Positions 1-23,839 of a DNA stretch of 64,000 nucleotides are shown piece by piece. The notes below the pieces were generated by a model. That model searched no databases. It saw only the letters and a list, made by a program, of their open reading frames with translations, and was not told the origin of the DNA. The stretch comes from Cyanophora paradoxa CCMP329 (taxonomy: Eukaryota; Plantae; Glaucophyta). The stretch covers positions 62,001 through 126,000 of the forward strand of contig QPMI01000044.1 of NCBI GenBank assembly GCA_004431415.1, given 5' to 3'. A program made the translations under genes and the position numbers. How positions within the stretch are numbered: the first letter of the stretch is position 1; every line of letters begins with the position of its first letter.

Positions 1-3000
1 CGCGCCGCCTCCGGCTGCAGCGGCAGCTGCGCCCGCCCCGTCGACGTCCCAGAACGGCGCTCGCCTGCCTCCCATCGCTGCGGGCGGCGCGGGCGCCGGC
101 GCGGGCCCTTCCTCGGGCGCCCCGCGCCACCCATCCAGCGACCCCGGCGGCCTCCGCCCGCTCGCACTCCCCGGCAGAGCAGCTGCAGCCCGCGTAGGAC
201 CGGACCACGCCGCTCCCGAGAAACGTGCGCTCGCGCCGGCGCCGGCGTCGGCATCGCCCCCGCCGCGGGCGTTGGGTATCCGCCTAACTTCTCGCCGCGT
301 ACGGGCTCAGACTCAGACTCAGAGTCTGCCGCGGGGTCAAAGGATCCGCCGGGAGCCGCCGACCCGCCCAAGAAAGGGTGCGTGCGCCTGCGCGCAGCCG
401 GCCCTAGGCCTCCCGCCCGCCGCGGCGCGCCGGTCGCCGTCGCGCCTGCCTCTTGCGAGCCGTGCTCAGACCGAGCGCGCGCGCCCCGCAGGCCAGGGTC
501 GGATCCGCACCACGCGGCGCCCGCGCCCAAGTCGGGCTTCCGCGTCTGGCCCCTCACGGTCAGCTCGGACGCGGCGCCCCCCTCGGGCTCGCCGATGGGG
601 CTGGCCGCCGGAGCCGGGGACGCCGGCGGGGGCGCGTCCGCTTCGTTCGCGAGCGACGCCGAGCGCGATCGGGATCGCGAGGACGGGGGGGATGAAGACG
701 GGGACGGGGACAGCGGCCCGCCCCTCTCTGCCGAAGACGCCCGCGAGCCCGGCGGCCGGGCCGTCCGCCCGGGGCGCGAGGCCCCCGAAACCGATCGGGA
801 CATCGAGGTACCCCCCTTCCTTTCTCTACCCCCCACCCCTTCTTTTTTCTGACGCCGGCACGGGGGTATACGTACGCGCAGTCCGGCAATCTGAAGCTGA
901 AGCTCCCGAAAGCGGATTCGAGGGCGCACCCGGCCGCGGGGGCGAACGGGAAGGGTCCAAGCCGCGGCCGCCGGGACAAGCGGAAGCGGAAGCAGAAGCC
1001 GCGCAACCTCGCCACACGCTGGCGGGACCTCTCCGTAAGATTTTTTTAACTTATGCTGTTTGATTGATAACAATGCAGACAACTAAGGCTTGCAACGCCG
1101 CCCGCCTGCAGATGAAGAAGAAGCTAATGGCGCTCGTCGCCTCGACGCAGCTCCTCACGACCCTCGTCCTCACCGGGTACGACTTTTTCGCCTTTGATTC
1201 ACTGCTCCTGTCCTGCTCTGCTCTGCTCTCCTCTGACTACGAGCCCCGGGCCGGTGCCACGGTACAGCGTGGTGGTCCTGGTTCTCTTCCTGTCCTCCTC
1301 GGCGCAGCTCGTCCGCCAAGCTGGCTCCGAGATCCTCACGAACCAGGTCCATCTTTCTCTTTCTCTCTCCCTTTCTTAATCTAGATCTTAATTTACAGTC
1401 GCTCTCGCGATCTTGATATCGTTGGCATATGTTAACACCACGGCTGGCGTGCGGCCGGCGGCTCGCCAGATCGTGTACGACATCAAGAACAACCAGATGA
1501 ATTACGGCTTCGCGGGCCAAGGCGACAACCCCTCCATCATCAACGCCGCGCGGGTGCGCGCGCGCAGCGATATGCTTCAGAACGTTCGGCCCACTCGGCT
1601 CTAAACTAATTATAAACCTCGCTCAGCTATAGCTATAGCTAACTAAACGGCTACTAAATTAAACTAAACGTCCGGCCCACTCGGCTTCTAAGCCTTGCCT
1701 TAGCTAAGGCGATCACTCGCGATCGGCTACTAAGCCTCGCTCAGCTCGGGCCGACGGCGGCGGGCCCCGAGGCGGACGCGATCGTCCGAGCCGCGAAGGA
1801 GGCGCTCGTCAACGAGATCGTCCGCCGCGACATCGAGTGCGTTTTACTTAGCTTTCTTTGTATATAATCCTAAGCTCTCTTAAGCTAAAGCTTACTATCG
1901 CTAAGCCATCGAGTTCGCTTTCACTTCGTTTGTTTCTGTAGCTAACGAGCGGTGGGAAGGTACTCGAGCCTCCTGAGCGCCGACGCGGACCCGCTGGTCA
2001 TCGTCTCCTCCAACAGGCGCGCGCCCCGCCGCCCTCCCCCGCGCCCCTCCCGCTGCCTCGCTGAGCCGCCCGTTCCGCTCTCGCCGGCGCGCAGGGACCG
2101 GCGCGGGGAGCCGATGCCCGAGCTGCGCTCCTTCACGCGGGCCCTCATCGAGAGCAACAAGCCCGTGCGCCAAATCGCCCTCCGCCCCTCCTCCTTTCGC
2201 CTCACCGCGCGCCCCCCGCCGCCAGACGCGATTCAGCCTGCTCGTGTCGCGCAAGGAGCTCGTGGAGGGCGAGGGCGCCGTCCCGAAGGACCCATCGGCC
2301 GACTACTTCCTCGTCCGGTCCGCTGGGGCGGGAGCCCGAGATCTAGATTTCGCGAAACTTGAATCCCGTGAAATTTCGCAGGTTTATCGGGCGGCCGGTG
2401 TACACGGGCCCAGACCAGCCCCGCCCCGCCGCGATCCTTCTCGCCGGCGACGTGGCGCGTCCTCCGTTCTTCGAATTCAGTGTTCCTTTGGTTTCTTCGG
2501 CGCTGACGGCGCCGGCCCGCGCGCGTGCTTGGGGCGCAGGTCAACGGGAAGAACTGGACGGTCGAGCCGTCCCGCGCCGCCTTCAAGTCGGGCTACGTCG
2601 CCGGTGCCCGCGCGCCGCCTCGCGCTCGCCGCCCCCGCCGCGGCCTTCCCTCACCCCCCGGCGGCCGCCCGCACCGCAGTGTACCAGCGCTCGCGGCCGG
2701 ACTGCGCCTCGAGCGAGCCCGGCTGCTTCCGCGTCTCCACAGCCATGCTCCGTGCGCGGAATTCGAATTCCGCGCCGCTGCGGCCTTGTCGCTCGCCGAG
2801 TCTGACGGCTCGCGGGGCGCGCAGCGGAGGACACGGAGCCGCGGCTGGCGCCGCTGCTTGGGGCCGCCGCGGACGGCCTCCTCGAGGCAGCCTCGTCCGC
2901 CCAGCCGCCCGGCTCCGTCGTCACCAGCGTCCTCAGCCTGGTTCGCGATCGTTTGAACTGCTTAAATTTCGAATTACAATTAATATTGGCTGCGATTGCA

Positions 3001-6000
3001 TTATCGGTGACACTCTGGTTTTAATTTGCTTCGACCAGGCCGGAGGGGAGAAGGTGACGGCGGCGGCGAAGGCCCTTCAGGACCCCTCCGGGCGCTCCGT
3101 CGCGTTCCTGGTGCGCGCGGGGCTCCAAAGCTGCGGATCCTTGTGATTTCAACTACTTATTTTCCTTAACGAACTTGACCACACTGTTAAAGTGTCCAAC
3201 TAACCCACTCTGGATCTCGACTGACTGTTTCGCGTCCTCAGGTCCGTGCCACTTCCCACGCGCCGTCGGACGAGGTGCATGCGAACACTGCGTGCTTCGA
3301 ATGGAGACCGCGCGCGCGGTTTTAATTTCGCGGCCGACGCCGCCGGCGCAGGTGCTTCGTATTGGGGTGCTCGCCTGCGTCGCCTCGGGAGTGTTCGTCT
3401 GCGTCATCTCCTGCTGGCTCTCCTGGCTCCTCCTCGTCCACATCCTCAGCGCCCTCCGGGATCTCAAGGCGCGCGCGCGCGCGCGCGTCCTCATTGCATA
3501 TATATATATATCACCGCAACTACATTACATAATTTTTCTTATTCCATTGACAAGAAGAAATATTAATACAACTTAATCCATTCTTGACGTCGACTCCGTT
3601 TCAGTGTCTGACGTCTTAAGCTTTCTGCGCGCGTATGCACAGGTGGCGGTGGAGGACTTTGATTTCCTCAGCGACAGCACTTCGTGCTCCTCCTCGCGGC
3701 ACTCGATCTCCCTGCCCCCCGGCAAAGCGTGCGCCAGCCGCCCGGGACGGTTGGGGTTGAAATAGAACACCGAGTGCAAGCGAGGCACGCGTGCCAGTCT
3801 AGGGCACAGCCTAGCTTCAACTTAAGCCCCCTTAAGCTTAGGCTCTCTCTCCATGCCGCCCGCGGCCGGCAAAGCGTGCGCGGGCATCGACCGCGGATCG
3901 TGTAATTAGTGTAGCCCGCGATCGATTATTTTATTATATTAGCCCGGCGCGGCTTCGCATTCGGCTCACGCGATCGCGACTTCGGCGTTCAGATTCGACC
4001 TCAAGACGGCTGCGAAAGACGAGATTGGCCGCCTGACGACGGCCTTCAGCCGCATGACCCGCCGCGTCACCGACGTGCGGCGCTTTTCCGTTTCTTTCCG
4101 CTCTGCAGCTGGTCCCTCACAACGGGCGGACCGGACCGCAGTCGTACGTGCGGCTGGAGGAAGCGAAGGAGAAGGCGACGTTCGATGAGGCGCGCCAGAA
4201 GCTCATCTTCGACACCTGCAACGACGGTCCGCTTGTGCTTGGATCTGTCCGCGTCCCCACCGCTCGTTCCGAGTCTGGGGCGTCGCAGCGGTCTTCGTGA
4301 CGGACAGCGCGTGCACCGTGCTGAGCATGAACCCGCGGGCCGCCGCCATGTTCTTGTACGACCCCAGCGAGGTCCGCCCCCTAGGCTTCCGCCTCTGCTT
4401 TGCCTTCCCGATCCGTCTCTGATCTGCTCGCCCTTCAGGTCGTGGGGCGCAACGTGAAGATTCTTCTGCCACCGCAGATTGCCGCTATCCACGATGCAGC
4501 AGTCGCGAGGTCGCTCACATACTTAATATTAGCTGGTTTTAGAACGCCCATCGCGGAATCGCTTTGTGCTCACCTCGTCCAACCGCGAACGGCAGGCATG
4601 TTGCTGCCGGTCTCACTTTGGACAAAGACAGCATCTTCCGGTGCGCATGCACTGCTTTAACACTGGTCATATTTCGTGCAATGATATCGTCGGGGGGTTT
4701 GACTTGTACGTCTACTTGCTTTTCTTAAACAGGGATTCCTACGGGAAGCGAAAGAACGGCGACATCTTTCCCGTCCAGATCGGCCTCAGGCGAGCTCGGC
4801 CCTTTGATGGCTCTCCTTCGCTTCGGGACCGAGCTGATGCGCCGGCGGCAGCGAGATGAAGATCGGCGACGAGCACCTCTTCGTCGGCATGATCCGAGGT
4901 ACCCGCGCCGGCTCGCATATGCAAATGCACCCGGAAAGCGCGGTTGCTCCGTGCGGCACGAGCGGCGCTGACCATGACGTGCGTGTGCGTCGCAGACATC
5001 ACGGAAAGGAAGGAGATGGAGCTTCAGATCGCCCGGGAGCGTATGCGGTGCGTACGCGTCCGTTCGCACTCCCTCCTCGGGCTGCGCTGCTCAAAGTCGG
5101 GCGTTGCAGGACCGAGAAGCTGTTGAAGAACCTGCTTCCGGCAACGGTGCCGGCGCCCGCCACACCTTGCTCCATCGATATCTCCTTCTTTTCCGCCATC
5201 TACAACTCTAGATCTTCGCTCTGACGCGCGCGCGCGGGCACGTGTGCTCAGATCGCCGATCGGCTCAAGGACATGCAGGAGCGCGAGGCGAAGCACGCGG
5301 CCCGCGAGCTCTCGCACGCCCGGAACCGCGCCGTTCTGCGAAGCGCGGTGCACGACCGACGCCCCGGCCCCTTCCTAAAACCAGTGCACGAGTCTCACCG
5401 AGCTTGGATGACCGAGCTTCTACCAAATTCTCCGTCTCTAGATGATACTCCGTCTCTGCCCGCATAACGAATTTCGGAAATGCAGTCGATGATGCACGCG
5501 GCCCTGCCGGCGCCGGCGCCGCCCTCGGACGAGGACGAGAGGGAAGACGAGTTCGGGGCGAGCACGGAGCTCGTCAAGGGCGCCCTCGCCGACCGCGTCG
5601 ACAACGTGTACGCCCCTCAGCTTTTACCTCTGCCTCTTTAACGCTTAGCTCTGTGTCTTCTTCTAACTCGGGGCGCGGCCTGCGCTGCGTTCGCAGACCC
5701 GTCCTCTTCGCCGACATCGTGCGCCGTCGATCCCGACCGGAGGGCGCCGTCCCGAGCCGCGGCCGGCGCCGACCGACTGCGCGCAGGTCAACTTCACGCC
5801 CCTCGCCTCCTCCATGGACCCCGCCCGCCTCGTCTCCCTCCTCAACGGTGCGTCCGTTCGATTTAATTTCCACAGAAGCTGCAAGAGCATTATCTTTTTT
5901 TAATTAAACTCTTGATGCGATGCAGACATCTTTTCGGACTTCGATTCGCTCGCGGAGAGGTTCGGCCTGGAGAAGATCAAAACGATCGGTGCGCACGGCC

Positions 6001-9000
6001 CTTTTCGTAGCTATAGGGGTGTGTATCGTCTGTATCCGGCCCTTACTCGCCGGCAGGGGATGCCTTCATGTGCGCTGGCGGGGTTCCTCCCGACGTCGAC
6101 GCGCCCGAGAATGGCAGGTGCGATCTCATATGCTGAACTAGTACTCGCCGAACTGGCGCCGGGCCTTCTCTTCGAATTCGATGGTGCATTAATATTCTCG
6201 TTTCCCGCGCCGTCAGACCGTCGGCGGCGGCGGCGGCGGCGGGAGACAAGTCGACGATGGTCGGCGCACCGGCAAAGAGATCGGCGTTCGAGTCCGGGTC
6301 CTTCATGGGCGCCGAGGTCGGCGCCAAGATTCGGTCCTTCGGGTTCGATTCTCTGGTTTTTTATCGCGCTTCGGCTACATATGGATAGGATCCGGAATAA
6401 TTCGGGCTTGTATCTCCATTTATTTGACGCCTCACCGCATCTTGCCTCGCAGGGCGTCCCCCCGGGACGCTCAGATGGCAGCGATTCGAGCCGAGTCACC
6501 CGTGGTGCGTTGCATTTTCGTGTGTCGGTGTCGCCTTGCTAACGCTTCGCCGCGTGCGCATGCAGGTCCGCATGGCGGTGCGAAGAAGCCTTCTCGCGCG
6601 CTTGGATTAATTTTTCTAAGCGTGTAGTTCTGAATCTTCCGCGGATGCGCAGCGGCTCGCGCTGGCGATGCACGAGGCGATTTCGCGGTACAAGAGCTTC
6701 GACGGGCGCTCGTTCCGCATCCGCATCGGCATCCACTGCGGCACCGTCATCGCCGGGTGCGGCCCTCCTGTCTTTCTTCTGCCGGGTCAGCCAGGCTCGA
6801 TCTCAACAAGTTTTGATCTTCTCGCGCTCAGGGTGATCGGCAAGAAAAAGCTTCTGTACGACCTGGTGCGGCGGTCGCTTGTGTTGGCTTTGTCCTCTCA
6901 GTCTGCAAACTTGCCTCTTCGCTCGCTCAAAATTGCAATTCTCATTGGCGCACCCTTTTCGCAGTGGGGAGATACCGGTGCGCAGCGCAAAATTTCACAC
7001 CCGAGCATGCGTTGCTGATGCGTGCGCTGACAAACGTTCTCGAACCGCAGTCAACGTCGCGAGTCGCATGGAGTCCTCCGGCGTTCCCGGCCGCACCCAG
7101 GTGCCCCCGAGCCCCCGCCCTTGCGCCTAGCTCTCGCGCCGCCGGCTCACGCGCGCCCCGGCCCGTGCTCAGGTGACGGAGGAGACGTACTACCACCTCC
7201 GCTCCAAGTTCGCCCTGGAGGAGCGCGGCCGCGTCCACATGTGCGCCATTCTTTCTAAGCTTGAACGAATGTATAAGTGGATAGATACCTGTTCAGTCAA
7301 TACAATTGCAAGTAGCTATAGCTCACTGTGAGTGCGCAGCAAGGGCAAGGGCGAGATGAGAACGTACTTCCTGCTGCACCTCAAGCCGGCCGAGCACACA
7401 GCGGGACTGCAGCTGGCAGCGGCGGGCGCAGCCGCGCCCGGGCTCAGGTCGCTCTCTCCGGCCCCGGCCACTTCGCGGACGCACCGCCTGCCGTCCCTCC
7501 AGGCGCGCAAATTTGTTTGGCAGAGTTTGCTCTGCCCGAGTTGTTTGGCAGAGTCTGCTCTGCCCTGCCTTCCGCGTGCGCTCACAATTTCGACTGCGAT
7601 TCTGCAGACCGACACGCGGCTTCTCTCGCCGGACTTCTCGGCCCTCTCGTGGCCCAAGTCCCACCTGGGCGACGTGATGCTCGGCATGATCCGCAACATT
7701 GGGGTGCGATTAAAATAAATGCGCAGCAGCAAATGGCGGGTCCGGATCAAGCTCCAAAGCAAGGCGCTATACTGTTAACGATAACGCGAGGTTTTTTAAT
7801 GCTCGGTTGACCTGGTTTTCGCCGCAGCTCATCGACTCTCTCCACGTGAACGAGCGCGAGCTCGCCTCGTTCATCGAAGTCGCTCTCTCCACCTACCGCG
7901 ACAAAAACCCCTTCCACGTGCGTTAAATTTGCTTTGCACGTGATTATGATGAAACCTTTGGCCTTCAGCGCTAGCTCATTTCATGTCTGCACGGATGCAC
8001 GGATAATATTAACGTTAACGTTTGCGTCGCAGAACGTGCACCACGCCATCGACGTCGCCCAGTGCATGTTCATCTTCCTCCTCGGCCTCAAGCAGTGCGT
8101 TCCTCTAGCTCCTCGTCCCATCTTGAAGTTGGCTGACCGCGGTGTCTGCGTGACTGCACCAGGCGGACGCAGCCAGCCGCGATCGCGGCCGAAGCCGCCT
8201 TGGATCCAGACGTCGACGCCGGCGGAGACGGAGCGGCGGCTGCTCCGGTCGCGTTCGGGGGCGAGCCGGCGGTCCCCTCGAATTCGTGCGCACGAACCGT
8301 CTATGGCATTTCGCAGAGCTGCGAAGCTGTCGGCTTCTCACTCGCGCGCGCGCCTCGCGCAGCGTTGTGTTCGACGACGTGGAGACGTTCGCCCTCCTCG
8401 TCGCCGGCCTCTGCCACGGTGCCCCCGCGCGTCGCGGCGATCCGTGTCTGCCTTCATTGACCGGCCACGGCGTGTGCAGACCTCGACCACCCGGGCGTGA
8501 CGAACGCTTTCCTCGCAAAGAGCCACGCACCGATGGCCATCCTCTACAGCAACAGCAGGTCTGCGCCCCATCTGGCGCTGGCCCAGTTCTGGTCGGTTCT
8601 CACCAGTGTATCCGTCGTGGCTAGCCCCCTGGAGCGGCACCACGCAGCCACGCTCCTTGGCCTCCTACAGAGGAAAGACCTTGGCATCCTCGCTAACATG
8701 TCGCGGGCCGACCAGGAACGCTTCTCCCAGGTGCGAGCGACGCCCAGCCAGTGACGCTCATGATCAGCGCTGTTTCCGCGCCAACCGGCTGATCGCTTGC
8801 GGCAGCTCGCGGTGGATGCGGTGCTGGCGACGGACATGGTCCTCCACAACGACTTCCTCGTCCGTCCCGCGCCCCGCCCCGTCAAACGGTTTCACTGCTT
8901 TAATTTTGGCGCTGTTCTCGCGCGCGTGTGTGGTCAGGTCTCTCTCGCGAGGCGGTTCCCCGCCTGCAAGGGCGTTCCGGGCTTTCCCGCGGCCGCCCCC

Positions 9001-9700
9001 GGGTCGAGCCCGTGCTCCCGTTTCTCCCACTACAGCGAAAAGGTCGCGTGAACCAGCCCGAATCCAGCGGCCTCCGCCGCGGCGCTGACGGCAGCATCGC
9101 GTCTCGATCGGCGCTGCAGGCCTTGCTGGGGGGCCTTCTGCTGAAGTGCGCGGACCTCGCCAACGGTGCCCGCACGTTCGAGCACTCGAAGCTCTCCGCT
9201 GTCCTCGTTCAGCAGGCGCGCCCCGTCAAAAAGAATTAAATTTCATTTCGTTTCTCTTGTCGTGTGTTTCCTTATCGGCGTTCTAATTTCGATCGCATTT
9301 CGAATTCAGGAATTCTTCGATCAGGCGACTCTTGAGACGGAAATGTCGCTGGAACCGACGCCCGGCTTCGCCCCGACAGGTCCGATATCGATCTCGGACA
9401 GTCCAATTCGTTTTTCATGTCGGATGACCGCAAAGTAAACCGCTCAGATGAGCCGGACCTGGGCAACGCGTCGCGGCAGGTTGGCTTCCTGACGGCTGTC
9501 GTCCAGCCGCTCTACGAAACCCTCGCCGCCGTCGCCCCCGAGGTGAGGCGAAGCCCTCAAATAAATTAAAGCGACGACGCTTCGGTCTGTGGCGTCGACG
9601 CTTACTCTTCCGCCAGCTGCCCGTCGCCCGGGCTATGGCGGCTAACGTTCGGAGCAACGCGGAGCAGTGGCGCGCGTTGCGCGCGCAGCACCACATCTAG
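1..9700 (+). CDS. Multi-exon membrane receptor adenylyl cyclase-phosphodiesterase fusion, copy 1 (5' end upstream of window): TM1-extracellular sensor-TM2-HAMP-PAS-class III AC-class I PDE
   Basis: Hand-spliced exons give TM1 (MKKKLMALVASTQLLTTLVLTGVVVLVLFL, ~1112-1300), TM2 (VLRIGVLACVASGVFVCVISCWLSWLLLV, ~3352-3440), HAMP (KDEIGRLTTAFSRMTRR, ~4015-4070), PAS (AVFVTDSACTVLSMNPRAAAMFLYDPSEVVGRNVKILLP...GKRKNGDIFPVQIGLSEMKIGDEHLFVGMIRDITERK), cyclase ([74 protein letters not shown]; ~5590-7380) and PDE (PFHNVHHAIDV, LCHDLDHPG, LERHH, LATDM, CADLAN, EFFDQ, QVGF; ~7610-9680). Stop TAG 9698-9700. Confidence 0.92.
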
Positions 9701-14455: not shown

Positions 14456-17400
14456 TTACGCTTGCTGCATCGTCATGCTGCTGCCACCATGCACGCTGTG
14501 CTGCGCGCGCAATAGACCCCACTGCTCCGCGTTGCTCCGAACGTTAGCCGCCATAGCCCGGGCGACGGGCAGCTGGCGGAAGAGTAAGCGTCGACGCCAC
14601 AGACCGAAGCGTCGTCGCTTTAATTTATTTGAGGGCTTCGCCTCACCTCGGGGGCGACGGCGGCGAGGGTTTCGTAGAGCGGCTGGACGACAGCCGTCAG
14701 GAAGCCAACCTGCCGCGACGCGTTGCCGCGGTCGGGTTCATCTGAGCGGTTTACATTGCGGTCAGCCAATATGCGAAACGGTTTGCGAAACGCGAACGCG
14801 CGCAATAAGCAACTGAACATGTGACCCGTGCGCAATACGCTTAAACAACAATTTGCAAGGCGGAAACGCACTTGTCGGGGAGAACCCGGGCGTGGGTTCC
14901 AGCGCCATCTCCGCCTCCAACGTTGATTGCTCGAAAAATTCCTGCGGCGAAATGTTCGAGAGGGTACGGCGACGATGATGACGACGATGGATATTCGTAT
15001 ATGCACCTGCTGAATCTGGGTGGCGGAAATCTTCGAGTGCTCGAACGTGCGGGCGCCGTTGGCGAGGTCCGCGCACTTCAGCAGAAGTCCCCCCAGCAAG
15101 GCCTGCATCGCCGATCGAGACGCGATGCTGCCGTCAGCGCCGCGGCGGAGGCCACTGGAATCGGGCTGGTTCACGCGACCTTTTCGCTGTAGTGGGAGAA
15201 CCGGGAGCACGGGCTCGACCCGGGGGCGGCCGCGGGGATGCCCGAAACGCCCTTGCAGGCGGGGAACCGCCTCGCGAGAGAGACCTGACCACACACGCGC
15301 GCGAGAACAGCGCCAAAATTAAAGCAGTGAAACCGTTTGACGGGGCGGGGCGCGGGACGGACGAGGAAGTCGTTGTGGAGGACCATGTCCGTCGCCAGCA
15401 CCGCATCCACCGCAAGCTGCCGCAAGCAATCAGCCGGCGCTGGTTGTCGCCAGCTGCAGCAGAGCGTCGCTCGCACCTGGGAGAAGCGCTCCTGGTCGGC
15501 CCGCGACATGTTGGCGAGGATGTGTACGTCCTTTCTTTGCAAGAGACTGAGCAACGTTGCCGCGTGGTGCCGCTCCAGCGGGCTGACGGCCGCAGATACG
15601 TTGTTGAAATTTGGCGGAAGCGAAACAGTCAGGAGGAGCCTCGGAGGGCGGACCTGCTGTTGCTGTAGAGGATGGCCATCGGCGCGTGGCTCTTCGCGAG
15701 GAAAGCGTTCGTCACGCCCGGGTGGTCCAGGTCTGCACACGCCGCGGCCGTTCAATGAAGGCAGACGCGGATCGACGCGCCGCGCGGGGGCACCGTGGCA
15801 GAGGCCGGCGACGAGGAGGGCGAACGTCTCCACGTCGTCGAACGCAACGCTGCGCGAGGCGCGCGCGTGAGTGAGAGGCGCTATGCAGCTCCGCAAAATG
15901 CCATAGACGGTTCGTGCGCACGAATTCGAGGGGACCGCCGGCTCGCCCCCGAACGCGACCGGAGCAGCAGCCGCTCCGCCTCCGCCGGCGTCGACGTCCG
16001 GATCCAAGGCGGCTTCGGCCGCGATCGCGGCTGGCTGCGTCCGCCTGGTGCAGTCACGCAGACACCGCGGTCAGCCAACTTCAAGATGGGACGAGGATCT
16101 AGAGGAACGCACTGCTTGAGGCCGAGGAGGAAGATGAACATGCACTGGGCGACGTCGATGGCGTGGTGCACGTTCTGTGTGCAGTACCGGCAAGGTCGCC
16201 AGAGGACAATGCCACAAACGCGAGCTCGTGAAGAACACGCACATGGAAAGAATTCTTGTCACGGTAGGTAGACAGGGCGACGTTGACGAATGCAACGAAA
16301 TCCCCTTCGTCGATGCGAAGCGCGTCGATAAGCTGCCGCACGTTACAGAAGTTACGGCGATGATTTCAAAGCTGTAAGATCTAAATCACGACGAACCCCG
16401 AGTAGTCGCGTCATTCCGAGCATAACAGCCGCGAGGTCGGTTTTGGGCCATGCAAGCGACGAAAACTCCGGCGAAATGATCCTCGGATCAAACTGCACGG
16501 CGGTTGTCGCCTACGTTAGCTGTTAAGCTATATATAGCTATCTACAATTTTGATTTACGTTCACGTGAAAATAGCGAAATACGAGCTGGAGCTTGAGGGA
16601 GGGCGCGGCCGTACCCGCAGCTGTGCGGCGAGCTTGCGAAGCGAAGCCTGTCCTTGTGGACGGTGCGACTCGTGATCCGAGCGCGTCGTTATCAACTGGC
16701 CCAGTCCGTGGCTGTGTTCGGGATCGCTCGGTTTTGCGCCTTGCAAGAAGTAGGTCCTCATCTCGCCTATGCCCTTCCTGCGTGCCCGATTAATATTGTA
16801 AAGAAGCATGCATTAGCAGATCTATAGCTAGAACATGGTTTCAGATCCAAAGAAAGCGAACGTACACGTGGATGCGGCCGCGCTCCTCCAGGGCGAACTT
16901 GGAGCGGAGGTGGTAGTATGTTTCCTCCGTCACCTAAGCACGGGCCGGGGCGCGCGTGAGCCGGCGGCGCGAGAGCCAGGGGCGAGGACGACGGGTCGTG
17001 GCACCTGGGTGCGGCCGGGAACGCCGGAAGACTCCATGCGACTCGCGACGTTGACTGCGGTTCGAGGACGTTTTTCAGTACATGCACCAGCAATGCATAT
17101 AATGCATGCTCGGGTTTGAGGTTTTGCGCTGCGCACCGGTATCTCCCCACTGCAAAAAGGGCGCGCCAATGAGAATTGCGATTTTGAGGAGGCAAGTTTG
17201 CAGAGGACAAAGCCAAAACAAGCGAACGCCGCACCAGGTCGTACAGAAGCTTTTTCTTGCCGATCACCCTGATCGCGAGATTAACAGCTGATGTTGACAC
17301 TGGCTAACCCAGCAGAAGAAGCGAAGGCTTAGGAGGGCCGCACCCGGCGATGACGGTGCCGCAGTGGATGCCGATGCGGATGCGGAACGAGCGCCCGTCG

Positions 17401-20400
17401 AAGCTCTTGTACCGCGAGATCGCCTCGTGCATCGCCAGCGCCAGCCTCTGCGCAGCCGCGGAAGCTTAAGATTCAGAACTACTCGCTTAGAAAACTTAAT
17501 GCAAGCGCGCGAGCGAGAAGGCTTCTTCGCACCGCCATGCGGACCTGCAAGATTGAAAGCGTCAAATTAAAACGGCACAACTCGAGAACAATCATTGAAT
17601 AGGGAATCCAAACATCGAGCGCGGACGCACGCACCACTGGCGGCTCGGCTCTCACGGCGGCTAGCTGTGCCTCCGCCGCGCTGTGTTACGGTGTTAGAGT
17701 GCATATCGGTCGAGCAAAAGCAAGCTGCCGCACATGAAGGAGCTCATTTTGGCGCCGTTGATAGAGCGGAGCGAGTTGGTGAAAGTTTCCGACCTCCGTT
17801 GAGTCGTCATCGAGTCTCGCCGTACTTCGCCAGCCCCCGACGACATACTGCAGTGAGCGCTTGAGCAAAACCGCGCGCAGACTCGACTCAAACATTAATT
17901 TGAAACGCTGTGCTGCACCCGTCTAGATCGGCAGCATCGACATCGGGAGGAACCCCGCCAGCGCACATGAAGGCGTCACCTGCCCGGCGAGTAAGAGACG
18001 GATACATAAGATACACGCCCCTACGAAAAGGGCCGTGCGCGCCGATCGTTTTGATCTTCTCCAGGCCGAACTTCTCCGCGAGTGAATCAAAGTCGTAGAA
18101 GATGTCTGCATCGCATCAAAAGTTTAATTACAAAAAGATAATGCTCTTGCAGCTTCTGTGGAAATTAAATCGAACGAAAGCACCGTTGAGGAGAGACACG
18201 AGGCGGGCGGGGTCCATAGAGGAGGCGAGGGGCGTGAAGTTGACCTGCGCGCAGTCGGTCGGCACCGGCCGCGGCCCGGGACGGCGCCCTCCGGTCGGGA
18301 TCGACGGCTTACGATGTCGGCGAAGAGGACGGGTCTGCGAACGCAGTGCAGGCCGCGCCTCGAGTTAGAAGAAGACACGCTCGCGCGGCGCGCGCGCGGC
18401 GCGGGAAGAGGCAGAGTTAAAAGCTGAAGGGCGTACACGTTGTCGACGCGGTCGGCGAGGGCGCCCTTGATTAGATCCGCGTTGGTCCCGAAGAGGTCGT
18501 CCTTCTCCGCGTCCTCCGGCGGCAGAGTCGGCTCGCTCGCCTGCGTGATTGACTGCATTTCCGAAATTCGAATTCGTTATGCGGGCAGAGTATATATATA
18601 TATATATTTATATGTGTTTGGTACGTAAAACGTTGCCGTGCACCATGCGACGTGTGCTGGCGCCGGTGCGCCGACGCGCTTTGAAAGAACGCGCGCGCGC
18701 AGCCTGCTGAGCTTCCTGCATGTCCTTGAGGCGGTCGGCGATCTGCGCGCGCTTGCATCAGAGCAGAATCTCCAGGAAAGAGACGGCGACGGCAACGACA
18801 CGCACCGTTGGCGGAAGCAAGTTCTTCAACAGCTTCTCCGTCCTGGAACCGTTGAACGTTAACGCGCGCGGGCGGCATCATTATAAAGTTACATTAAAAT
18901 ATGAGCAATGTAATACAAGTGCAACGGATGGAGGCGATTGCGGATGGAGGCGATTGCGGATGGAGGCGATTGCGGATGGAGGCGATTGCGGATGGAGGCG
19001 ATTGCGGTTGCGATTGGGCGAGCGCACCGCGTGCGCTCCCGTGTGATCTGCTTCTCCATCTCCTTCCTTTCCGTTATGTCTGGCCATGGAACCCGCGATC
19101 ACGCCACCGGGCCGGGGCCGGCGGGATCTAGGCCGGCGGGCGGAATTCGAAACCTCGGATCATGCCGACGAAGAGGTGCTCGTCGCCGATCTTCATCTCG
19201 CTGCCGCCGGCGCGTCAGCTCGGTCCCAAATCGAAGGAGAGCTACCAAAGGGCCGATCGCGAGCTCGCCTGAGGCCGATCTGGATGGGGAAGAGTTCGCC
19301 ATTCTTTCGCTTCCCGTAGGTGTCCCTGAAACACGAACGGACGAACGTTAACAAACCAACCCCAATCGATATCAATGCGCATGCACGAAATACAATCGAA
19401 AGCATTGCGTGCGCACCGGAAGAGTTGGTGGTTACTCAAAGTGAGACCGGCTGCCACATGCCTGTACGTATACACATCGTTTCGAATGAGTCCGAGACAG
19501 ATAGCTATAGACTTGCAAATTTAAGCGAAATTGAAGCGTGTATACGCGACTAGTAGGATCCGCACAACACACCTTGCAACTACGTCGTCGTGGATAGCGG
19601 CAATGTTCGGCGGCTGCAAAATCTTTACATTGTGCCCCACGACCTAAAGGGAGACCAATTGCAACGTAGAGCGGATCGGAAAGGCGAAGGCAAAGTAGAG
19701 GCGGAAGAGGAGGCCTAGGGGGCGGACCTCGCTCGGGTCGTACAAGAACATGGCGGCGGCCCGCGGGTTCATGCTCAGCACGTTGCACGCGCTGTCCGTC
19801 ACGAAGACCGCTGCGATCGCGACGACCCGGGCTCGGAACGAGCCGTGGGGACGTCGACGCGGGCAGATCCAAGCACAAGCGGACCGTCGTTGCAGGTGTC
19901 GAAGATGAGCTTCTGGCGCGCCTCCTCGAACGTCGCTCGCTCCTTCGCTTCCTCCAGCCGCATGTAAGACTGCGGTCCGCACGAATCAGGGAAAAGGGTA
20001 CATATATACGCAGCGGAATGCAGCGGGATCAACCGCACGTCGGTGACGCGGCGGGTCATGCGGCTGAAGGCCGTCGTCAGGCGGCCGATCTCGTCAGATG
20101 CGGCCGTCGTCAACGTGAATCTGAAAACGTCAACGTCGCATGAGCCGCGCCGATCGCAAGCGATGAGCGTGCAGGCACGCGCGCGCGTGCGCACGCTTTG
20201 CCGGGCGGAAGTGTGAACGAGTGCGTGGAGGAAGAAGAACTGTTGTCATGGTGGAAGTCGAATTCCTCCACCGCTTCCTGCACACGGAGAAAGGCGTCAG
20301 ACACATAAATGAAACGTATTATCAAGTTCTTCTTGTTCTGTTCTCCCATTCGTGCTCAAAGCTCGCCTTCAGGTGGCGTAGGGCGCGGAGAACGTGCACA

Positions 20401-23400
20401 ATGAGGAGCCAGGAGAGCCAGCAGGAGACGGCGCAGGTGACCACGCCCGAGGCGACGCCGGCAACGACCCCGGTCCGCAGCACCTGCGGGGCAGGCAGGC
20501 AGACGGGCGCCCGATTAGAGTTGGGTCGATCATGATCAGAGAACAAACGAAATTCAAAGCGCCGCACCCCGTCAGAATCAACGTGCGAGGTGGCGCGGAC
20601 CTAAGCGTACGCGCGCGCAGAGTTAGCTCGAGAACTGTGCGGAACTGGACAGCTGACTATAATGTATTAAGAGCGCACCAGGAATGCGATGGAGCGCCCA
20701 GTGGGATCCTGCAGCGCTTTCACCGCGACAGTCACCTCCTCCCGGCCGTGGTGGCCAGCCTGCGATCGCGACTTGATAAGAAATTGCAATTTCTGCCGAA
20801 TGTAGATTCTAGATGTAATCGACCGAAAGCAGTCACCAGGATGAGGACGTTGGTGACGACGGAGCCGGGCGGCTGCGCGGACGAGGCGGCGTCGAGGAGG
20901 CTGTCCGCGGCGGCCCCGAGCAGCGGCGCGAGCCGCGGCTCCGTGTCCTCCGCTGCGCGCCCCGCGCGCCGTCAGACTCGGCGAGCGACAAGGCCGCAGC
21001 CGCGCGGAATTCGAATTCCGCGCACGGAGCATGGCTGTGGAGACGCGGAAGCAGCCGGGCTCGCTCGAGGCGCAGTCCGGCCGCGAGCGCTGGTACACTG
21101 CGGTGCGGCCGGCCGCCGGCGGGTGAGGGGCGCCCGCGGCGGGGGCGGCGAGGGCGAGGTGGCGCGCGGGCACCGGCGACGTAGCCCGACTTGAACGCGG
21201 CGCGGGACGGCTCGACCGTCCAGTTCTTCCCGTTGACCTGCGCCGCAAGCAAGGCGCGCGCACGCGCCGTCAGTGGCCGCGCCGAAGAAATCAAAGGAAC
21301 ACTGAATTCGAAGAACGGAGGACGCGCCACGTCGCCGGCGAGAAGGATCGCGGCGGGGCGGGACTGGTCCGGGCCGGTGTAGACGGGGTGCCCAACGAAA
21401 CTGATTTAATTGCTTCAGCCGAATTCGAAGGGCGAAATCTCAGGAAATCTCGGGCCCCAGCGTACCGGACGAGGAAGTAGTCGGCGGTGGGGTCCTTCGG
21501 GACGGCGCCCTCGCCCTCCACGAGCTCCTTGCGCGACACGAGCAGGCTGAAGCGCGTCTGGTGGCGGGAGCGGTGAGGCGAAAGGAGGAGGAGGGGCGGC
21601 AGGCGGCGGGGGCGCACGGGCTTGTTGCTCTCAATGAGGGCCCGCGTGAAGGAGCGCAGCTCGGGCATCGGCTCCCCGCGCCGGTCCCTGCGCTCCGGCG
21701 AGGGCGGGCACAGCTTAGGACCCGGGAGGGCGGAGGGGCACGCGGGAAGGAGGCGGGCGGCGGGGCGCGCGCCTGTTGGAGGAGACGATGACCAGCGGGT
21801 CCGCGTCGGCGCTCAGCAGGCTCGAGTACCTTCCCACCGCTCGTTAGCTGCCGAAGACTACAGAAGCAAATCAAGTAAAGGAGCTCGAGGTAATTATAAA
21901 CTATATGCAAAGAGAGCTAAGTAAACTGGGCGAATTAGAGCGCACTCGATGTCGCGTCGCACGATCTCGTTGACGAGCGCCGCCTTTGCGGACCTCAGAA
22001 TGGCCTCCGCCTCGGGGCCCGTCGCCGTCGGCCCGAGCTGAGCGAGGCTTAGAAGCCGAGTGGGCCGAATGCGCTGCGACCTGGGTCGCGGACCCTTGCC
22101 GCGCTAATGATGGAGGGGTTGTCCCCTTGGCCGGCGAAGCCGTAGCTCATCTGGTTATTCTTGATGTCGTACACGATCTGGCACGCCACCCGTGTTGTCA
22201 GGCTGAATTATAGCAAGCCAAATTACAGAAAGCAAAAGCAATTACCTGGTTGGTGAGGATTTCGGAGACGGCTTGGCGGTTGAGCTGCGAATGCATCGAC
22301 AGGAAGAGAACCAGGACCACCACGCTGTATACGTATCGTGGGACCGGGGTCAGACCCGATTAATATTGCGACAGCGAGTAGCGCGGGTCGGGCTGTGAAG
22401 AGCCGAACACGCGTACGCGAACCCAATTAGGACGAGGGTCGTGAGGAGCTGCGTCGAGGCGACGAGCGCCATTAGCTTCTTCTTCATCTGCGGGCGGGCG
22501 GCGATGCAAGCATAAGTCCCGATCGTCTACATTATTATCAACAGAAGAGCGTAAGCGATGCAAGTATACGTAGGCGATGTAAGCATAAGTCGTCTGCATT
22601 ATTATCAACAGAACAGCGTAGATTAGAGCTTACGGAGAGGTCCCGCCAGCGAGCGGCGAGGCTCCGCGAGGGGGCCTTCCGCTTCCCTTCGTCCTGGATC
22701 CGGGCCCGCCGGGCGTGGCCGGGGGTGTGCGCGTTCGAGTTCGTCCTGTCGGTCCGCTGCGGCCGATCCTTCCCGGAATGCTGCGCACGCGTCCACGTTA
22801 GCGTCGACGAGTCGAATCCATATTAAACGTTTGATGGGATATCAATCGATATCGATCAGCAAAAGCGTGCACGCGCCTCGGCGTCGTCATCGTACGCGTG
22901 CTCCGGGTCGACATCAATATTTTCGCTGGCGAGCGAGCCGCGGCGGCCGCCGGCGCGCTCCGTCAGCGGGCTGCAGGCTGAGGTGGGCGCCGTGGAGCCC
23001 AGCAGGTGGACGAGGGGGGGAGGAGCGCTAGCCCCGGGCGCGCGCGACGCGGGGGTCGAAGGCGACGCCGACTCCGCCCACTTCGAGCTGCGCGGATCCG
23101 GAAGAACTCAGCTAGAGCTGCAGCCCCCTGCGGCCGCCGGGCCACAACTGGCAAGCGCAGCGTGCGCACCCCGCGTCCGTCTTGTACGGGATGGGATCGT
23201 GACAGGGATCGTTCTCGCCCGCGGCTTCTGCGCATGCAGGGCCCGGGGCTTTAGGGATATCTAGCTATAGAGGGTCAAAGCAAAGCCTTGGCAAAGCCAG
23301 CTTGGCAAGCTTAAGCTGTTAGCTATGGGCGGTGGAGCGAGCGCACGGATTTGCGACTCCTTTTGAGAGCCGTGGGGTTCGGGAGAGACGCGGGGAGGCT

Positions 23401-23839
23401 TGAAGGGGGAGAGGGTGAAAAGGGGGCGGGCCCCGAGGCTGCCGGGATCGCTGGAGGAGTGACCGTGCAGGGGGCGGGCGGCTGCAGCCGCGTCTGCGGT
23501 CGGCGCGCTTGCTTCGTGAATCTCGTACGCGTCGCGATCTCTTAAGCTGTGCACTTGGGAGACACCAGACGAGCCGGATGGCATGATCACGATGTCAGCT
23601 GCGCATGCGACCGCGGCCGGTTCCGCGGGCTCGAGGGTCGCCGTGCCGCTCGCTGCTACTGGGGCCGACAGCTGCGCATGGGCGCGCGCATCCGGCCGCG
23701 GCCCCGGTACCGGGGGCGTTTCGTCCGCTCCTACAAACGCATTCACGAGCCGCGACCGCGGGGGGCCCGACTGCGCATGCTCCGGCGCCGAATGCAGGGC
23801 GATCGCGAGGGGATTCTCCTCGCTCGGCGTCGACAGCAT
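14456..23839 (-). CDS. Multi-exon membrane receptor adenylyl cyclase-phosphodiesterase fusion, copy 2 (inverted paralog of copy 1)
   Basis: Same domain order and, where checked, the same intron positions as copy 1 (MKKKLMALVASTQ ~22487, IVYDIKNNQMSYGFAGQGDN ~22177, HAMP ~20100, PAS ~19920-19160, AC ~18460-16740, PDE ~16500-14520). Ends ...AEQWGLLRAQHSVHGGSSMTMQQA* (TAA 14456-14458). Candidate ATG 23839 (MLSTPSEENPL) is uncertain; the N-terminal HSSSDPGSLGARPL matches HPSSDPGGLRPL of copy 1. Confidence 0.9.
18925..19004. repeat. Intronic minisatellite, 5 x CGGATGGAGGCGATTG (16 bp)
   Basis: Five perfect tandem copies; absent from the equivalent intron of copy 1. Confidence 0.95.

What the first reader, a model, noticed from the sequence alone, without database searches (positions are those of the whole stretch)
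1..23839. Self-contained cAMP on/off receptor: sensor-HAMP-PAS-adenylyl cyclase-phosphodiesterase in one polypeptide, in two copies
Seen: both paralogs encode a two-TM receptor followed by HAMP, PAS, a class III cyclase and a class I PDE in one spliced frame. Established: the cyclase keeps both metal-binding Asp (FADIV, IGDA), the ATP-specifying Lys (KIKTIG) and Asp (LYDLWG) and the N/R pair (VNVASR), so it should be an active homodimeric adenylyl cyclase. The PDE keeps HNxxH, HD, ERHH, ATDM, ADLAN and the invariant Gln (QVGF). The known streptophyte CAPE fusion has the opposite order (PDE then AC). Inference: a membrane receptor that both makes and destroys cAMP, giving local pulses or adaptation from an extracellular input plus a PAS input, analogous to bacterial GGDEF-EAL switches.
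Basis: partly seen in the sequence, partly recalled or inferred. Interest (0 to 1): 0.92.

Follow-up and report, generated by a model that had tools for sequence, protein, structure and literature searches.

The report
Receptor adenylyl cyclase–phosphodiesterase fusion genes
Two neighbouring, expressed genes of the glaucophyte alga Cyanophora paradoxa each encode one membrane receptor carrying a FixL-like (probably haem, gas-sensing) PAS domain, an enzyme that makes cAMP and an enzyme that destroys it; the fusion is real, but cyclase-phosphodiesterase fusions are already known from diatoms and, in reverse order, from plants with motile sperm.

Summary
The window is from Cyanophora paradoxa (contig tig00000178). 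It holds two convergent paralogues, about 81% identical in protein. Copy 1 lies at 882-9700 (+) and copy 2 at 23839-14456 (-), with 53-54 tiny exons each.

Both encode, in order: TM1, a ~300-aa orphan ectodomain, TM2, a HAMP-like segment, PAS, a cyclase-transducer helix, a class IIIa cyclase, a linker and a class I PDE. The public gene models (P0001, P0047) map exactly onto the window.

Spliced RNA contigs from three studies confirm the junctions. One 707-nt contig runs from the cyclase exons through the linker into the PDE exons.

New here: the PAS domain is FixL-type, with the haem-ligating His and the distal Arg conserved. The cyclase domain groups with cyanobacterial sensor-HAMP-PAS cyclases. 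At least five such genes exist in this genome, and all keep both catalytic sites.

A two-TM guanylyl cyclase/PDE fusion was described in diatoms in 2016, and CAPE is the reverse-order fusion. I call this a new variant of a known kind: ATP-specific, with HAMP plus haem-type PAS, in a glaucophyte.

First-stage readers of this scan noted the same architecture, and the FixL-like PAS, at other loci of this genome. No enzyme activity has been tested.

The parts
882..9700 (+). Copy 1 gene, exon 2 to stop codon TAG: 53 exons, 1337 codons without any stop. Exon 1 and the ATG are unresolved (candidate ATG at 595).
   Evidence: P0001 maps exactly to 3853-9697. Upstream exons were projected from copy 2 with conserved AG/GT(GC) sites and an open frame.
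1130..1298 (+). Copy 1 TM1 (spliced span)
   Evidence: Hydropathy on P0047, mapped to copy 1.
1299..3363 (+). Copy 1 extracytoplasmic sensor domain, about 295 aa, with no recognisable family
   Evidence: no Pfam hit, no homologue, no profile match. Language-model features resemble Cache/CHASE domains, which is a lead only.
3364..3645 (+). Copy 1 TM2 (spliced span)
3646..4174 (+). Copy 1 HAMP-like segment (AS2 motif DEIGRLTTAFSRM)
   Evidence: Pfam HAMP reaches 21.1 bits in paralogue P0005, below the cutoff of 25. The segment aligns to the HAMP of cyanobacterial P0088. A probable AS1 extension runs to 3468.
4193..5015 (+). Copy 1 FixL-type PAS domain (spliced span)
   Evidence: Pfam PAS_9/PAS_4/PAS. 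Best PDB matches of copy 2 and P0005 are FixL haem domains, with His and Arg conserved.
5016..5272 (+). Copy 1 signalling helix / cyclase-transducer element (LLKNLLPATIADRLK)
   Evidence: Partial HNOBA hit on the equivalent part of P0047.
5579..7379 (+). Copy 1 class IIIa cyclase catalytic domain, with two low-complexity inserts and micro-exons 6566-6577 and 6965-6977
   Evidence: Pfam, PDB alignments of copy 2, RNA joints, exon map.
6683..8219 (+). Genomic span covered by one spliced 707-nt RNA contig (X1 record 2) that joins the cyclase exons, both linker exons and the first three PDE exons
   Evidence: tables 5 and 8. The exon lengths add up to the contig's 707 nt.
7380..7697 (+). Copy 1 cyclase-PDE linker (exons 7340-7502 and 7608-7703)
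   Evidence: dN/dS 0.41.
7698..9622 (+). Copy 1 class I PDE catalytic domain (spliced span)
   Evidence: Pfam 1.8e-58, PDB PDE4B/4D for copy 2, RNA joints.
14456..23839 (-). Copy 2 gene (P0047, g12721): ATG at 23839, 54 exons, stop TAA at 14458-14456
   Evidence: Exact splice map.
20472..22293 (-). Copy 2 ectodomain, flanked by TM1 (22294-22469) and TM2 (20275-20471)
19937..20274 (-). Copy 2 HAMP-like segment. The public model probably omits 11 aa that would be gained by reading on to a GC donor after 20367.
   Evidence: inference, not checked with RNA.
19060..19918 (-). Copy 2 FixL-type PAS
16738..18465 (-). Copy 2 class IIIa cyclase domain
14567..16402 (-). Copy 2 class I PDE domain

Best explanation
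These are two tail-to-tail paralogues of a Cyanophora paradoxa gene family with at least five members. Each encodes a type of receptor enzyme that is probably a dimer.

Domain order: a cytoplasmic low-complexity N-terminus, TM1, a ~300-aa outside domain of unknown fold, TM2, a HAMP-like linker, a FixL-type PAS domain, a coiled-coil cyclase-transducer helix, a class IIIa nucleotide cyclase, a ~70-100-aa linker and a class I (PDE4-like) phosphodiesterase.

Shown: gene structure, expression as one spliced RNA across the cyclase-PDE junction, domain order, conservation of every canonical catalytic residue in both enzymes in all five paralogues, and purifying selection.

Inferred from established knowledge of the families: the cyclase works as a head-to-tail homodimer and uses ATP (Lys/Asp specificity pair). 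The PDE hydrolyses cAMP. The PAS domain binds haem through the conserved proximal His and reports O2, NO, CO or redox state.

Proposed mechanism: an outside ligand (via TM2 and HAMP) and a gas or redox signal (via PAS) are passed down the dimeric helix to the cyclase. The covalently attached PDE is held as a dimer by the cyclase. It either runs constitutively, giving short, local, self-terminating cAMP pulses, or is regulated reciprocally, giving a synthase/hydrolase switch as in GGDEF-EAL or Rel enzymes.

The cyclase part is most similar to cyanobacterial sensor-HAMP-PAS cyclases. The gene may therefore be a cyanobacterium-derived sensor cyclase that acquired a eukaryotic PDE before the family expanded.
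For: Gene models and expression:
- Exact codon-level maps of P0001 and P0047 onto the window.
- Spliced RNA joints in runs from 3 studies, and one contig bridging cyclase to PDE.

Domains:
- Pfam: PAS_9 39 bits, Guanylate_cyc 193-197 bits, PDEase_I 198 bits.
- Two TM segments.

Cyclase:
- Best solved relatives are tmAC C2 domains and homodimeric mycobacterial Cya/Rv1625c.
- Metal Asp x2 (FADIV, IGDA), Lys (KTIGD), Asp (YDLWG), Asn/Arg (VNVASR) and Lys (VKG) are present in all five paralogues.

PDE:
- Best solved relatives are cAMP-specific PDE4B/4D, E about 5e-32.
- H-N-x-x-H, HD, E-x-H-H, T-D-M, A-D-L-x-N and Q are conserved in the two window copies. Across the five AC-PDE paralogues only N to D in HNxxH of P0005 departs.

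PAS:
- Best PDB hits are FixL haem domains, E 1.5e-16 for copy 2 and 2e-23 for P0005, far ahead of LOV and DosP.
- The proximal His (RmFixL H194), R200 and the distal R214 align in the window copies.

Selection and origin:
- dN/dS between the copies is 0.33 (HAMP-PAS), 0.37 (AC), 0.41 (linker) and 0.21 (PDE).
- The cyclase domain is 44-47% identical to Roseofilum and other bacterial dCache-HAMP-PAS cyclases, against at most 40% to any eukaryote retrieved.
- The five Cyanophora cyclase domains form one clade (SH-aLRT 99), sister to those bacterial cyclases (85).
Against: - No biochemical data exist for either domain or for haem binding.
- A 55-85-aa low-complexity insert lies between the transducer helix and cyclase strand beta1 in all paralogues, and is RNA-supported in copy 1. 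It could loosen the coupling of PAS to cyclase.
- A second ~55-aa insert lies inside the cyclase domain.
- The FG-loop residues of FixL (Ile209/Ile210) are not conserved, and paralogue P0005 lacks the aligned distal Arg. Ligand specificity, or haem binding itself, may therefore differ.
- HAMP is below Pfam's threshold.
- The PDE4 Tyr that orients the invariant Gln is not conserved, so cAMP against cGMP or dual specificity is open.
- The sister relation to cyanobacterial cyclases has only moderate support and rests on a hit-biased sample of 31 sequences.
- Contigs cannot exclude additional shorter transcripts that end between the cyclase and the PDE.
Confidence: 0.6

Rival explanations
1. Only one of the two enzymatic domains is catalytically relevant. 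The other serves as a dimerisation or allosteric (product- or substrate-binding) module, as in many GGDEF-EAL proteins. The protein would then be a sensor-regulated PDE or a plain receptor cyclase.
For: Sequence cannot prove activity. The inserts within and before the cyclase domain might impair it. A first-stage note of this scan (s1-515408, unchecked) reports a paralogue with a dead cyclase and an intact PDE. P0166 has a PDE only, with degraded motifs (ERAS instead of ERHH).
Against: All seven cyclase residues and all PDE metal/substrate residues are kept in all five AC-PDE paralogues. dN/dS is below 0.4 in both domains.
Confidence: 0.2
2. The PAS domain is not a haem sensor. It binds another ligand, or none, and merely transmits the ectodomain/HAMP signal.
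For: FG-loop Ile residues of FixL are replaced, and the distal Arg is missing in P0005. PAS domains change cofactor easily.
Against: FixL haem domains are the best PDB matches by 8-10 orders of magnitude in E-value. The proximal His is invariant in the four paralogues whose PAS region is in the model, and the Arg pair is kept in both window copies.
Confidence: 0.35
3. The fusion is an annotation or assembly artefact: two adjacent genes (a cyclase and a PDE) joined by read-through.
For: Contigs across two genes do not by themselves prove a single transcript (tool caveat).
Against: Canonical GT..AG introns and one open frame run through two linker exons on a single RNA contig, and parts are seen in two further runs. 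The same order occurs at at least five separate loci. The linker is under purifying selection. The PDE part has no start codon or upstream non-coding gap of its own.
Confidence: 0.03
4. The enzyme pair handles cGMP or both nucleotides, as proposed for the diatom GC/PDE.
For: PDE specificity cannot be read safely from sequence, and the Gln-orienting Tyr of PDE4 is not conserved.
Against: The cyclase has the Lys/Asp pair of adenylyl cyclases, not the Glu/Cys of guanylyl cyclases. The nearest solved PDEs are cAMP-specific PDE4, and the adenine-binding Asn (ADLAN) is kept.
Confidence: 0.1

Closest known systems
[quoted passage not shown] 2016 PMC4726125; Bilcke et al. 2020 PMC8027222)
   Same: It is a membrane protein with two TM helices and an extracellular stretch N-terminal of a class III cyclase and a class I PDE on one polypeptide. 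It forms a multigene family and is proposed to give tight control of a cyclic nucleotide. The ESM Atlas neighbour of P0004 is a mostly diatom cluster with both Pfam families (score 0.94).
   Different: The diatom cyclase is predicted to be guanylyl (guanine-type residues) and its PDE cGMP-type. No HAMP or PAS is reported. The Cyanophora cyclase is Lys/Asp (ATP) and sits nearest cyanobacterial cyclases. No diatom protein appeared among the listed sequence hits of either domain, so common origin of the two fusions is unproven and may be convergent. The domain order in diatoms was not verified here.
CAPE (COMBINED AC with PDE) of streptophytes with motile sperm (PMC5159850, PMC8115329, PMC11032487)
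   Same: Class III AC plus class I PDE in one membrane-anchored protein (two TM). Both activities were shown in vitro for MpCAPE, and a role in flagellate-cell motility is reported. Cyanophora is also a flagellate.
   Different: The order is reversed: PDE N-terminal and AC C-terminal in CAPE. CAPE has no HAMP and no PAS. It is restricted to streptophytes. The CAPE surveys list streptophytes and chlorophytes only; glaucophytes are not mentioned in PMC8115329.
Cyanobacterial dCache-HAMP-PAS-PAS adenylyl cyclases (e.g. Roseofilum proteins P0088, P0107, P0155)
   Same: Two-TM sensor, HAMP, PAS, transducer helix and class IIIa cyclase in the same order. The cyclase is 44-47% identical and the DEIGxL HAMP motif and the RDITERK-LL-N-LP-IA-LK helix align.
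   Different: They have no PDE. Their ectodomain is a recognisable dCache, whereas the Cyanophora ectodomain shows no profile similarity to it. Their PAS domains match the Cyanophora PAS only weakly (about 29% identity, ~50 bits); whether they are FixL-type was not tested. They lack the two low-complexity inserts.
Haem-PAS oxygen sensors FixL (1D06, 1DP6) and DosP
   Same: The PAS domains share sequence, with the proximal His and Arg residues aligned. DosP likewise couples a haem-PAS domain to nucleotide second-messenger turnover.
   Different: The outputs are a histidine kinase (FixL) or GGDEF-EAL c-di-GMP domains (DosP), not a class III cyclase plus a class I PDE. Both are bacterial.
Bacterial GGDEF-EAL and Rel/SpoT bifunctional enzymes; Bacteroidota cyclase-HD fusions (Atlas ranks 2-3)
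   Same: The logic is the same: synthase and hydrolase of one messenger on one chain, often behind PAS or HAMP sensors.
   Different: The catalytic folds and messengers are unrelated, so this is an analogy only.

Membership tests
Class III nucleotide cyclase (Pfam PF00211), adenylyl-specific, homodimeric type IIIa | Significant match to the catalytic-domain profile | tested here: met
   P0047 193 bits and P0001 197 bits, against a cutoff of 21.9. Exon pieces by reference also hit.
Class III nucleotide cyclase (Pfam PF00211), adenylyl-specific, homodimeric type IIIa | Two metal-binding Asp, transition-state Asn/Arg and phosphate-binding Lys, all in one chain | tested here: met
   FADIV, IGDA, VNVASR and VKG align to tmAC C1/C2 residues and are invariant in 5 paralogues.
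Class III nucleotide cyclase (Pfam PF00211), adenylyl-specific, homodimeric type IIIa | Lys/Asp substrate pair (ATP) rather than Glu/Cys (GTP) | tested here: met
   KTIGD and YDLWG align to EKIKTIG and YDIWG of tmAC C2.
Class III nucleotide cyclase (Pfam PF00211), adenylyl-specific, homodimeric type IIIa | cAMP synthesis and dimer formation | not testable with these tools
   Needs an enzyme assay. No complex job was run.
Class I cyclic-nucleotide phosphodiesterase (PF00233) | Significant match to the catalytic-domain profile | tested here: met
   198-199 bits against a cutoff of 24.8. PDE4B/4D are the best PDB hits, E about 5e-32.
Class I cyclic-nucleotide phosphodiesterase (PF00233) | Metal-site His/Asp/Glu motifs (HNxxH, HDxxHxG, ExHH, TDM, ADLxN) and the invariant purine-scanning Gln | tested here: met
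   FHNVHH, CHDLDHPG, LERHH, LATDM, CADLAN and RQVGF are present in both copies.
FixL-type haem-binding PAS | Closest sequence relatives are haem-PAS domains | tested here: met
   1D06/1DP6 FixL at E 1.5e-16 (copy 2) and 2e-23 (P0005). The next classes (LOV, DosP) are at 1e-5 to 1e-11.
FixL-type haem-binding PAS | Proximal His (Rm H194 / Bj H200) and the Arg residues that contact propionate and ligand (Rm R200, R214) | tested here: met
   All three align in both window copies. His is invariant in 4 paralogues. R214 is not aligned in P0005, and FG-loop Ile209/210 are not conserved.
FixL-type haem-binding PAS | Haem actually bound, with a gas-dependent output | not testable with these tools
   Needs spectroscopy of recombinant protein.
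HAMP domain (PF00672) | Profile match above threshold, directly after TM2 | tested here: inconclusive
   P0005 scores 21.1 bits against a cutoff of 25. P0047 gives no hit, probably because its model skips AS1. The AS2 motif DEIGRLTxAFxRM aligns to the HAMP of P0088. No PDB match.
CAPE (streptophyte PDE-AC) | PDE N-terminal and AC C-terminal | tested here: not met
   The order here is AC then PDE. The CAPE order comes from PMC5159850.
Diatom GC/PDE | Two TM helices N-terminal of a cyclase and a PDE domain on one chain | tested here: met
   The feature is as described in PMC4726125 and PMC8027222.
Diatom GC/PDE | Guanylyl-type cyclase residues / orthology to the diatom genes | tested here: not met
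   The cyclase is Lys/Asp type. No diatom fusion appeared among the listed hits. No diatom sequence could be fetched for a tree, so orthology itself is untested.
Cache / PDC-fold extracellular sensor | Profile or fold similarity of the ectodomain | tested here: inconclusive
   No Pfam hit at E up to 0.1. No homologues outside Cyanophora. hhalign against cyanobacterial dCache ectodomains gives probability 0.1%. The AF2 model has pLDDT 45 and is unusable. Only language-model features point to Cache/CHASE.

The most novel reading that the evidence does not exclude
This is a eukaryotic haem-based gas (O2/NO/CO) receptor that directly and reciprocally controls both synthesis and hydrolysis of cAMP on one dimeric polypeptide. 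It was built by joining a cyanobacterium-derived sensor-HAMP-haem-PAS adenylyl cyclase to a eukaryotic PDE in the glaucophyte lineage, independently of the diatom GC/PDE and streptophyte CAPE fusions. It would then be a third, convergent invention of the cyclase-PDE principle, and the first with a defined physical input.
Probability: 0.3. Interest if true: 0.75.

Novelty: new variant of a known kind. Interest (0 to 1): 0.55.

Why it matters
Cyclase-PDE fusions are rare. They matter for how cells confine and time cyclic-nucleotide signals. For CAPE both activities and a role in sperm motility are shown. For the diatom GC/PDE only expression data exist.

The Cyanophora family adds a version with a plausible, experimentally tractable input: a FixL-like PAS domain, so the input would be O2, NO, CO or redox state. 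It has an ATP-specific cyclase and sits in a third major lineage of Archaeplastida and algae.

It could show whether synthase and hydrolase are switched reciprocally by one sensor helix. It could also show how a bacterial-type two-TM/HAMP/PAS transmitter drives eukaryotic enzymes, and whether oxygen sensing is linked to flagellar behaviour in a photosynthetic flagellate. The compact PAS-AC-PDE core might also be a useful scaffold for engineered cAMP pulse generators.

Tried and rejected
- Paralogue-against-paralogue tblastn to find coding frames: the copies are too similar at DNA level to separate frames.
- A first splice-mapping script timed out. The rewritten one worked.
- The look-up of encoding contigs for P0005 returned nothing on record.
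- Ectodomain: Pfam, a homologue search restricted to 125-545 and a profile-profile comparison with cyanobacterial dCache ectodomains were all negative. The AF2 model from a 2-sequence alignment had pLDDT 45. I therefore ran no fold search on it.
- AC-PDE core model from a 5-sequence alignment: mean pLDDT 50 with the cyclase part below 50. It was too poor to test colinearity with the diatom Atlas cluster, so no fold search was run.
- HAMP against PDB: no significant match.
Homology of the two fusions is therefore untested.
- Long ORFs of the 9.7-14.4 kb inter-copy spacer and of 24-64 kb gave no Pfam hit except an F-box. There are no tRNAs.
- The extended copy 1 model (exons 882-3728 joined to the P0001 exons) was built only inside the sandbox for translation, identity and dN/dS. 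It was never sent to a search tool.


Full report
**What is in the window**

The region is GC-rich (58-66%) and broken into very short open frames, as expected for an intron-dense eukaryote. blastn shows two colinear, inverted copies, 971-9691 against 22697-14498, at 68-95% identity and arranged tail to tail. Exon pieces given by reference hit Pfam Guanylate_cyc (5916-7127) and PDEase_I (8461-9566).

**Identity of the genes**

An exhaustive HMMER search with the exon piece 8461-8751 returned P0001 at 91% identity. Cluster look-up names it Cyanophora paradoxa tig00000178_g12720.t1, and names three further Cyanophora proteins. A later search added P0047, which is tig00000178_g12721.t1.

A codon-exact splice mapper places P0001 (914 aa) on 38 exons, 3853-9697 (+). 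It places P0047 (1417 aa) on 54 exons, 23839-14459 (-). So both public models are encoded here without a single mismatch.

P0001 is N-terminally truncated. Sixteen upstream exons (882-3728) are colinear with copy 2, keep AG/GT or GC splice sites and read through without a stop. This gives 1337 codons that are 81% identical to copy 2. Copy 1's first exon is not resolved: there is a candidate ATG at 595, and 1-880 is otherwise unassigned.

Median exon and intron lengths are both 76 nt. The smallest exons are 12 and 13 nt.

**Expression and the critical junction**

Runs that hold 10-25% of the locus's words were laid on 4000-9900. Their contigs skip GT..AG intervals that coincide, within the stated cut offsets, with the model's introns:
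- 5346>5485, 6341>6452, 6755>6831, 7097>7170
- 7499>7605, 7702>7827, 7917>8033, 8094>8163
- 9040>9118, 9212>9307, 9376>9445, 9540>9615

The two micro-exons appear as 9 and 12 'letters between'. The 12-letter one encodes WGDT of the YDLWGDT motif.

One X1 contig of 707 nt (record 2, depth 4.8) lies on 7340-7499 and 7605-7702. Its remaining 239 and 210 nt equal the summed lengths of the flanking exons. Upstream these are part of 6653-6756, 6832-6865, 6965-6977, 7051-7100 and 7173-7240. Downstream they are 7828-7917, 8033-8094 and 8163-8219. It therefore carries, in one open frame, the cyclase C-terminal half (GTVIAGVIG...VNVASRMESSG), the whole linker and the PDE start, including FHNVHH.

Runs of two other studies cover parts of the same path. 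These are contigs, not reads, so additional shorter isoforms cannot be excluded.

**Domain by domain (copy 2 numbering)**

- **TM1 132-157 and TM2 about 456-480** by hydropathy.
- **The ~300 aa between them.** This stretch has no Pfam hit. It has no homologue outside Cyanophora in the size class that the search covers (proteins of roughly 780-2480 aa). It has no profile similarity to the dCache ectodomains of the nearest bacterial cyclases. Protein-language features resemble Cache/CHASE sensors, which is a lead only. The AF2 model was unusable.
- **HAMP.** The AS2 motif DEIGRLTTAFSRM aligns with the HAMP of Roseofilum P0088. Pfam HAMP reaches only 21.1 bits in paralogue P0005. In both window copies, reading the TM2 exon on to a GC donor adds VH(V/I)L(R/S)ALR(H/D)LK. 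This aligns without a gap to ILEPLRAL of P0005, so the public P0047 model probably drops half of AS1. That is inference.
- **PAS 552-670.** Pfam PAS_9 scores 39.6 bits. The best solved relatives are the haem domains of FixL: 1D06 at E 1.5e-16 and 1DP6 at 1.4e-13. The next class (YtvA LOV, DosP) is at 1e-5 or weaker. For P0005 the figures are 2e-23 against 1e-11. The haem-ligating His (Rm H194), Arg200 and the ligand-contacting Arg214 align in both window copies. The His is invariant in the four paralogues whose model includes the PAS region. The residue roles are established FixL knowledge. The FG-loop isoleucines are not kept.
- **Signalling helix.** RDITERKEME...LLKNLLPPTIADRLK aligns to the equivalent helix of the cyanobacterial cyclases. 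It gives the usual partial HNOBA hit.
- **First insert.** A 55-85-aa low-complexity insert follows the helix in all paralogues. It is present in RNA (5251-5346 joined to 5485-5585).
- **Cyclase 756-994.** Best PDB matches are tmAC C2 domains and the homodimeric mycobacterial Cya/Rv1625c. Both metal Asp, the Lys/Asp ATP pair, Asn/Arg and the phosphate Lys (the first K of VKGxG, by spacing to IIC2 K1065) are present in all five paralogues. A second ~55-aa insert follows GDAFMCAGGVPP.
- **PDE 1066-1381.** Pfam gives 1.3e-58. The best PDB matches are PDE4B/4D, then trypanosomatid PDEs, PDE3 and PDE7. All metal and substrate motifs are present.
- **Selection.** dN/dS between the copies is 0.21-0.41 in every segment, with dS about 0.26-0.34 in the domains. 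Both copies are maintained genes, not assembly duplicates.

**Family and distribution**

Cyclase followed by PDE also occurs in P0005 (g16603, 1499 aa, the complete architecture), P0004 (g13247) and P0165 (g14659, with a PAS remnant). P0002 and P0166 are PDE-only models.

I ran a word-seeded search of 5.8 billion proteins with the AC-PDE region and with the PDE region. The only listed proteins carrying both PF00211 and PF00233 were from Cyanophora. The PDE domain's best outside matches are only 26-31% identical. These lists are truncated and length-limited, so absence elsewhere is not shown.

The cyclase domain is most similar to bacterial dCache-HAMP-PAS cyclases, mainly the cyanobacterium Roseofilum (44-47% identity). 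The best eukaryotic match is at most 40%. In a 31-sequence quick tree the five Cyanophora domains form a clade (SH-aLRT 99) sister to those bacterial cyclases (85). This is suggestive of a cyanobacterial origin, not proof.

**Comparison with what is known**

Both of its activities and a role in sperm motility are published (PMC11032487).

Moeys et al. 2016 (PMC4726125) reported a 'bifunctional guanylyl cyclase/phosphodiesterase' in Seminavis robusta with two TM helices N-terminal of both catalytic domains. They proposed ligand binding outside and tight control of cGMP, and stated that the combination was then known only from diatoms. Bilcke et al. 2020 (PMC8027222) list eight such genes. The ESM Atlas neighbour of P0004 is a 130-member, mainly diatom cluster with both families.

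I found no paper that mentions such a protein in Cyanophora or glaucophytes. The Cyanophora proteins differ from the diatom ones by ATP-type residues, the HAMP-like segment, the FixL-type PAS and the cyanobacterial affinity of the cyclase. Whether the two fusions share an origin could not be tested.

**Earlier notes of this scan**

After I had reached the FixL reading, a word search showed that first-stage readers had noted the same sensor-HAMP-PAS-AC-PDE architecture at three other loci of this genome. They had also noted a FixL-like haem PAS at three loci, one with a 'dead cyclase'. These are unchecked notes. They agree with the paralogues found here but are not independent evidence.

**Mechanism proposed**

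The shown and inferred steps are separated under Best explanation. In short: a dimeric two-input receptor in which an outside ligand and a haem-PAS gas or redox signal set cyclase output through the transducer helix. The tethered PDE dimer either terminates the signal locally or is switched in the opposite sense.

My confidence that the architecture and its expression are real is about 0.95. That both enzymes are active, about 0.6. That the PAS binds haem, about 0.5. That regulation is reciprocal, about 0.3.

**Verdict**

This is a real, expressed and well-conserved gene pair of an undescribed glaucophyte family. It is a new variant of the known cyclase-PDE fusion principle rather than a new kind. 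The most interesting and testable new element is the FixL-type PAS domain.

Noticed in passing
window 6566-6577 and 6965-6977 (copy 2: 17544-17533 and 17149-17137): Micro-exons of 12 and 13 nt inside the cyclase domain. The second encodes WGDT of the catalytic YDLWGDT motif. Both are confirmed as inserted letters in RNA contigs. Each gene has 53-54 exons, with median exon and intron lengths of 76 nt.
   Followed up: yes
window 2016/2017, 2454/2455, 3468/3469 (hypothetical) and others; copy 2 equivalents: GC-AG introns are frequent: 4-5 of about 53 donors per gene in the models. That is far above the ~1% usual in eukaryotes.
   Followed up: partly
window 20400-20367 (copy 2) and 3436-3468 (copy 1): The public model P0047 seems to use a GT donor 33 nt too early. 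Reading on to a GC donor restores 11 aa of the HAMP AS1 helix, which then aligns gap-free with paralogue P0005. This was not checked with RNA.
   Followed up: partly
window 882-3728: The public model P0001 (g12720) starts at an artificial ATG at 3853 and misses the whole TM1-ectodomain-TM2 part. Those exons are intact in the genome.
   Followed up: yes
window 5273-5578 and about 6060-6560 (copy 1): Two low-complexity inserts lie in all paralogues: 55-85 aa between the transducer helix and the cyclase core, and about 55 aa after GDAFMCAGGVPP. They are transcribed. GC-rich repeats here (5505-5524, 6221-6243) attract many unrelated RNA contigs, which produces the depth spikes and loose ends.
   Followed up: partly
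window 5607 (loose end in run X3): A contig continues past the exon end with letters that encode SVMFADIVNF. This is the sequence of paralogue g14659 (P0165), not of this locus, so that paralogue is probably expressed too, or the contig is chimeric.
   Followed up: no
window 60403-61524 (+): A long ORF with an F-box domain (Pfam F-box-like, E 1.4e-8). The other long ORFs of 24-64 kb and of the 9.7-14.4 kb spacer have no Pfam hit.
   Followed up: partly
window 9701-14455: A 4.7-kb spacer lies between the two stop codons, with lower GC (50-58%) and small tandem repeats (TACGTA x4.5 at 10120; a 21-nt unit x2 at 13428). RNA contigs run at least 200 nt past copy 1's stop codon (3' UTR).
   Followed up: partly
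protein P0166 (tig00001264_g7877, another contig): A PDE-only relative with degraded motifs (ERAS for ERHH, HDAGHPG, LATDI). It may be the 'dead cyclase' type noted by another first-stage reader.
   Followed up: no
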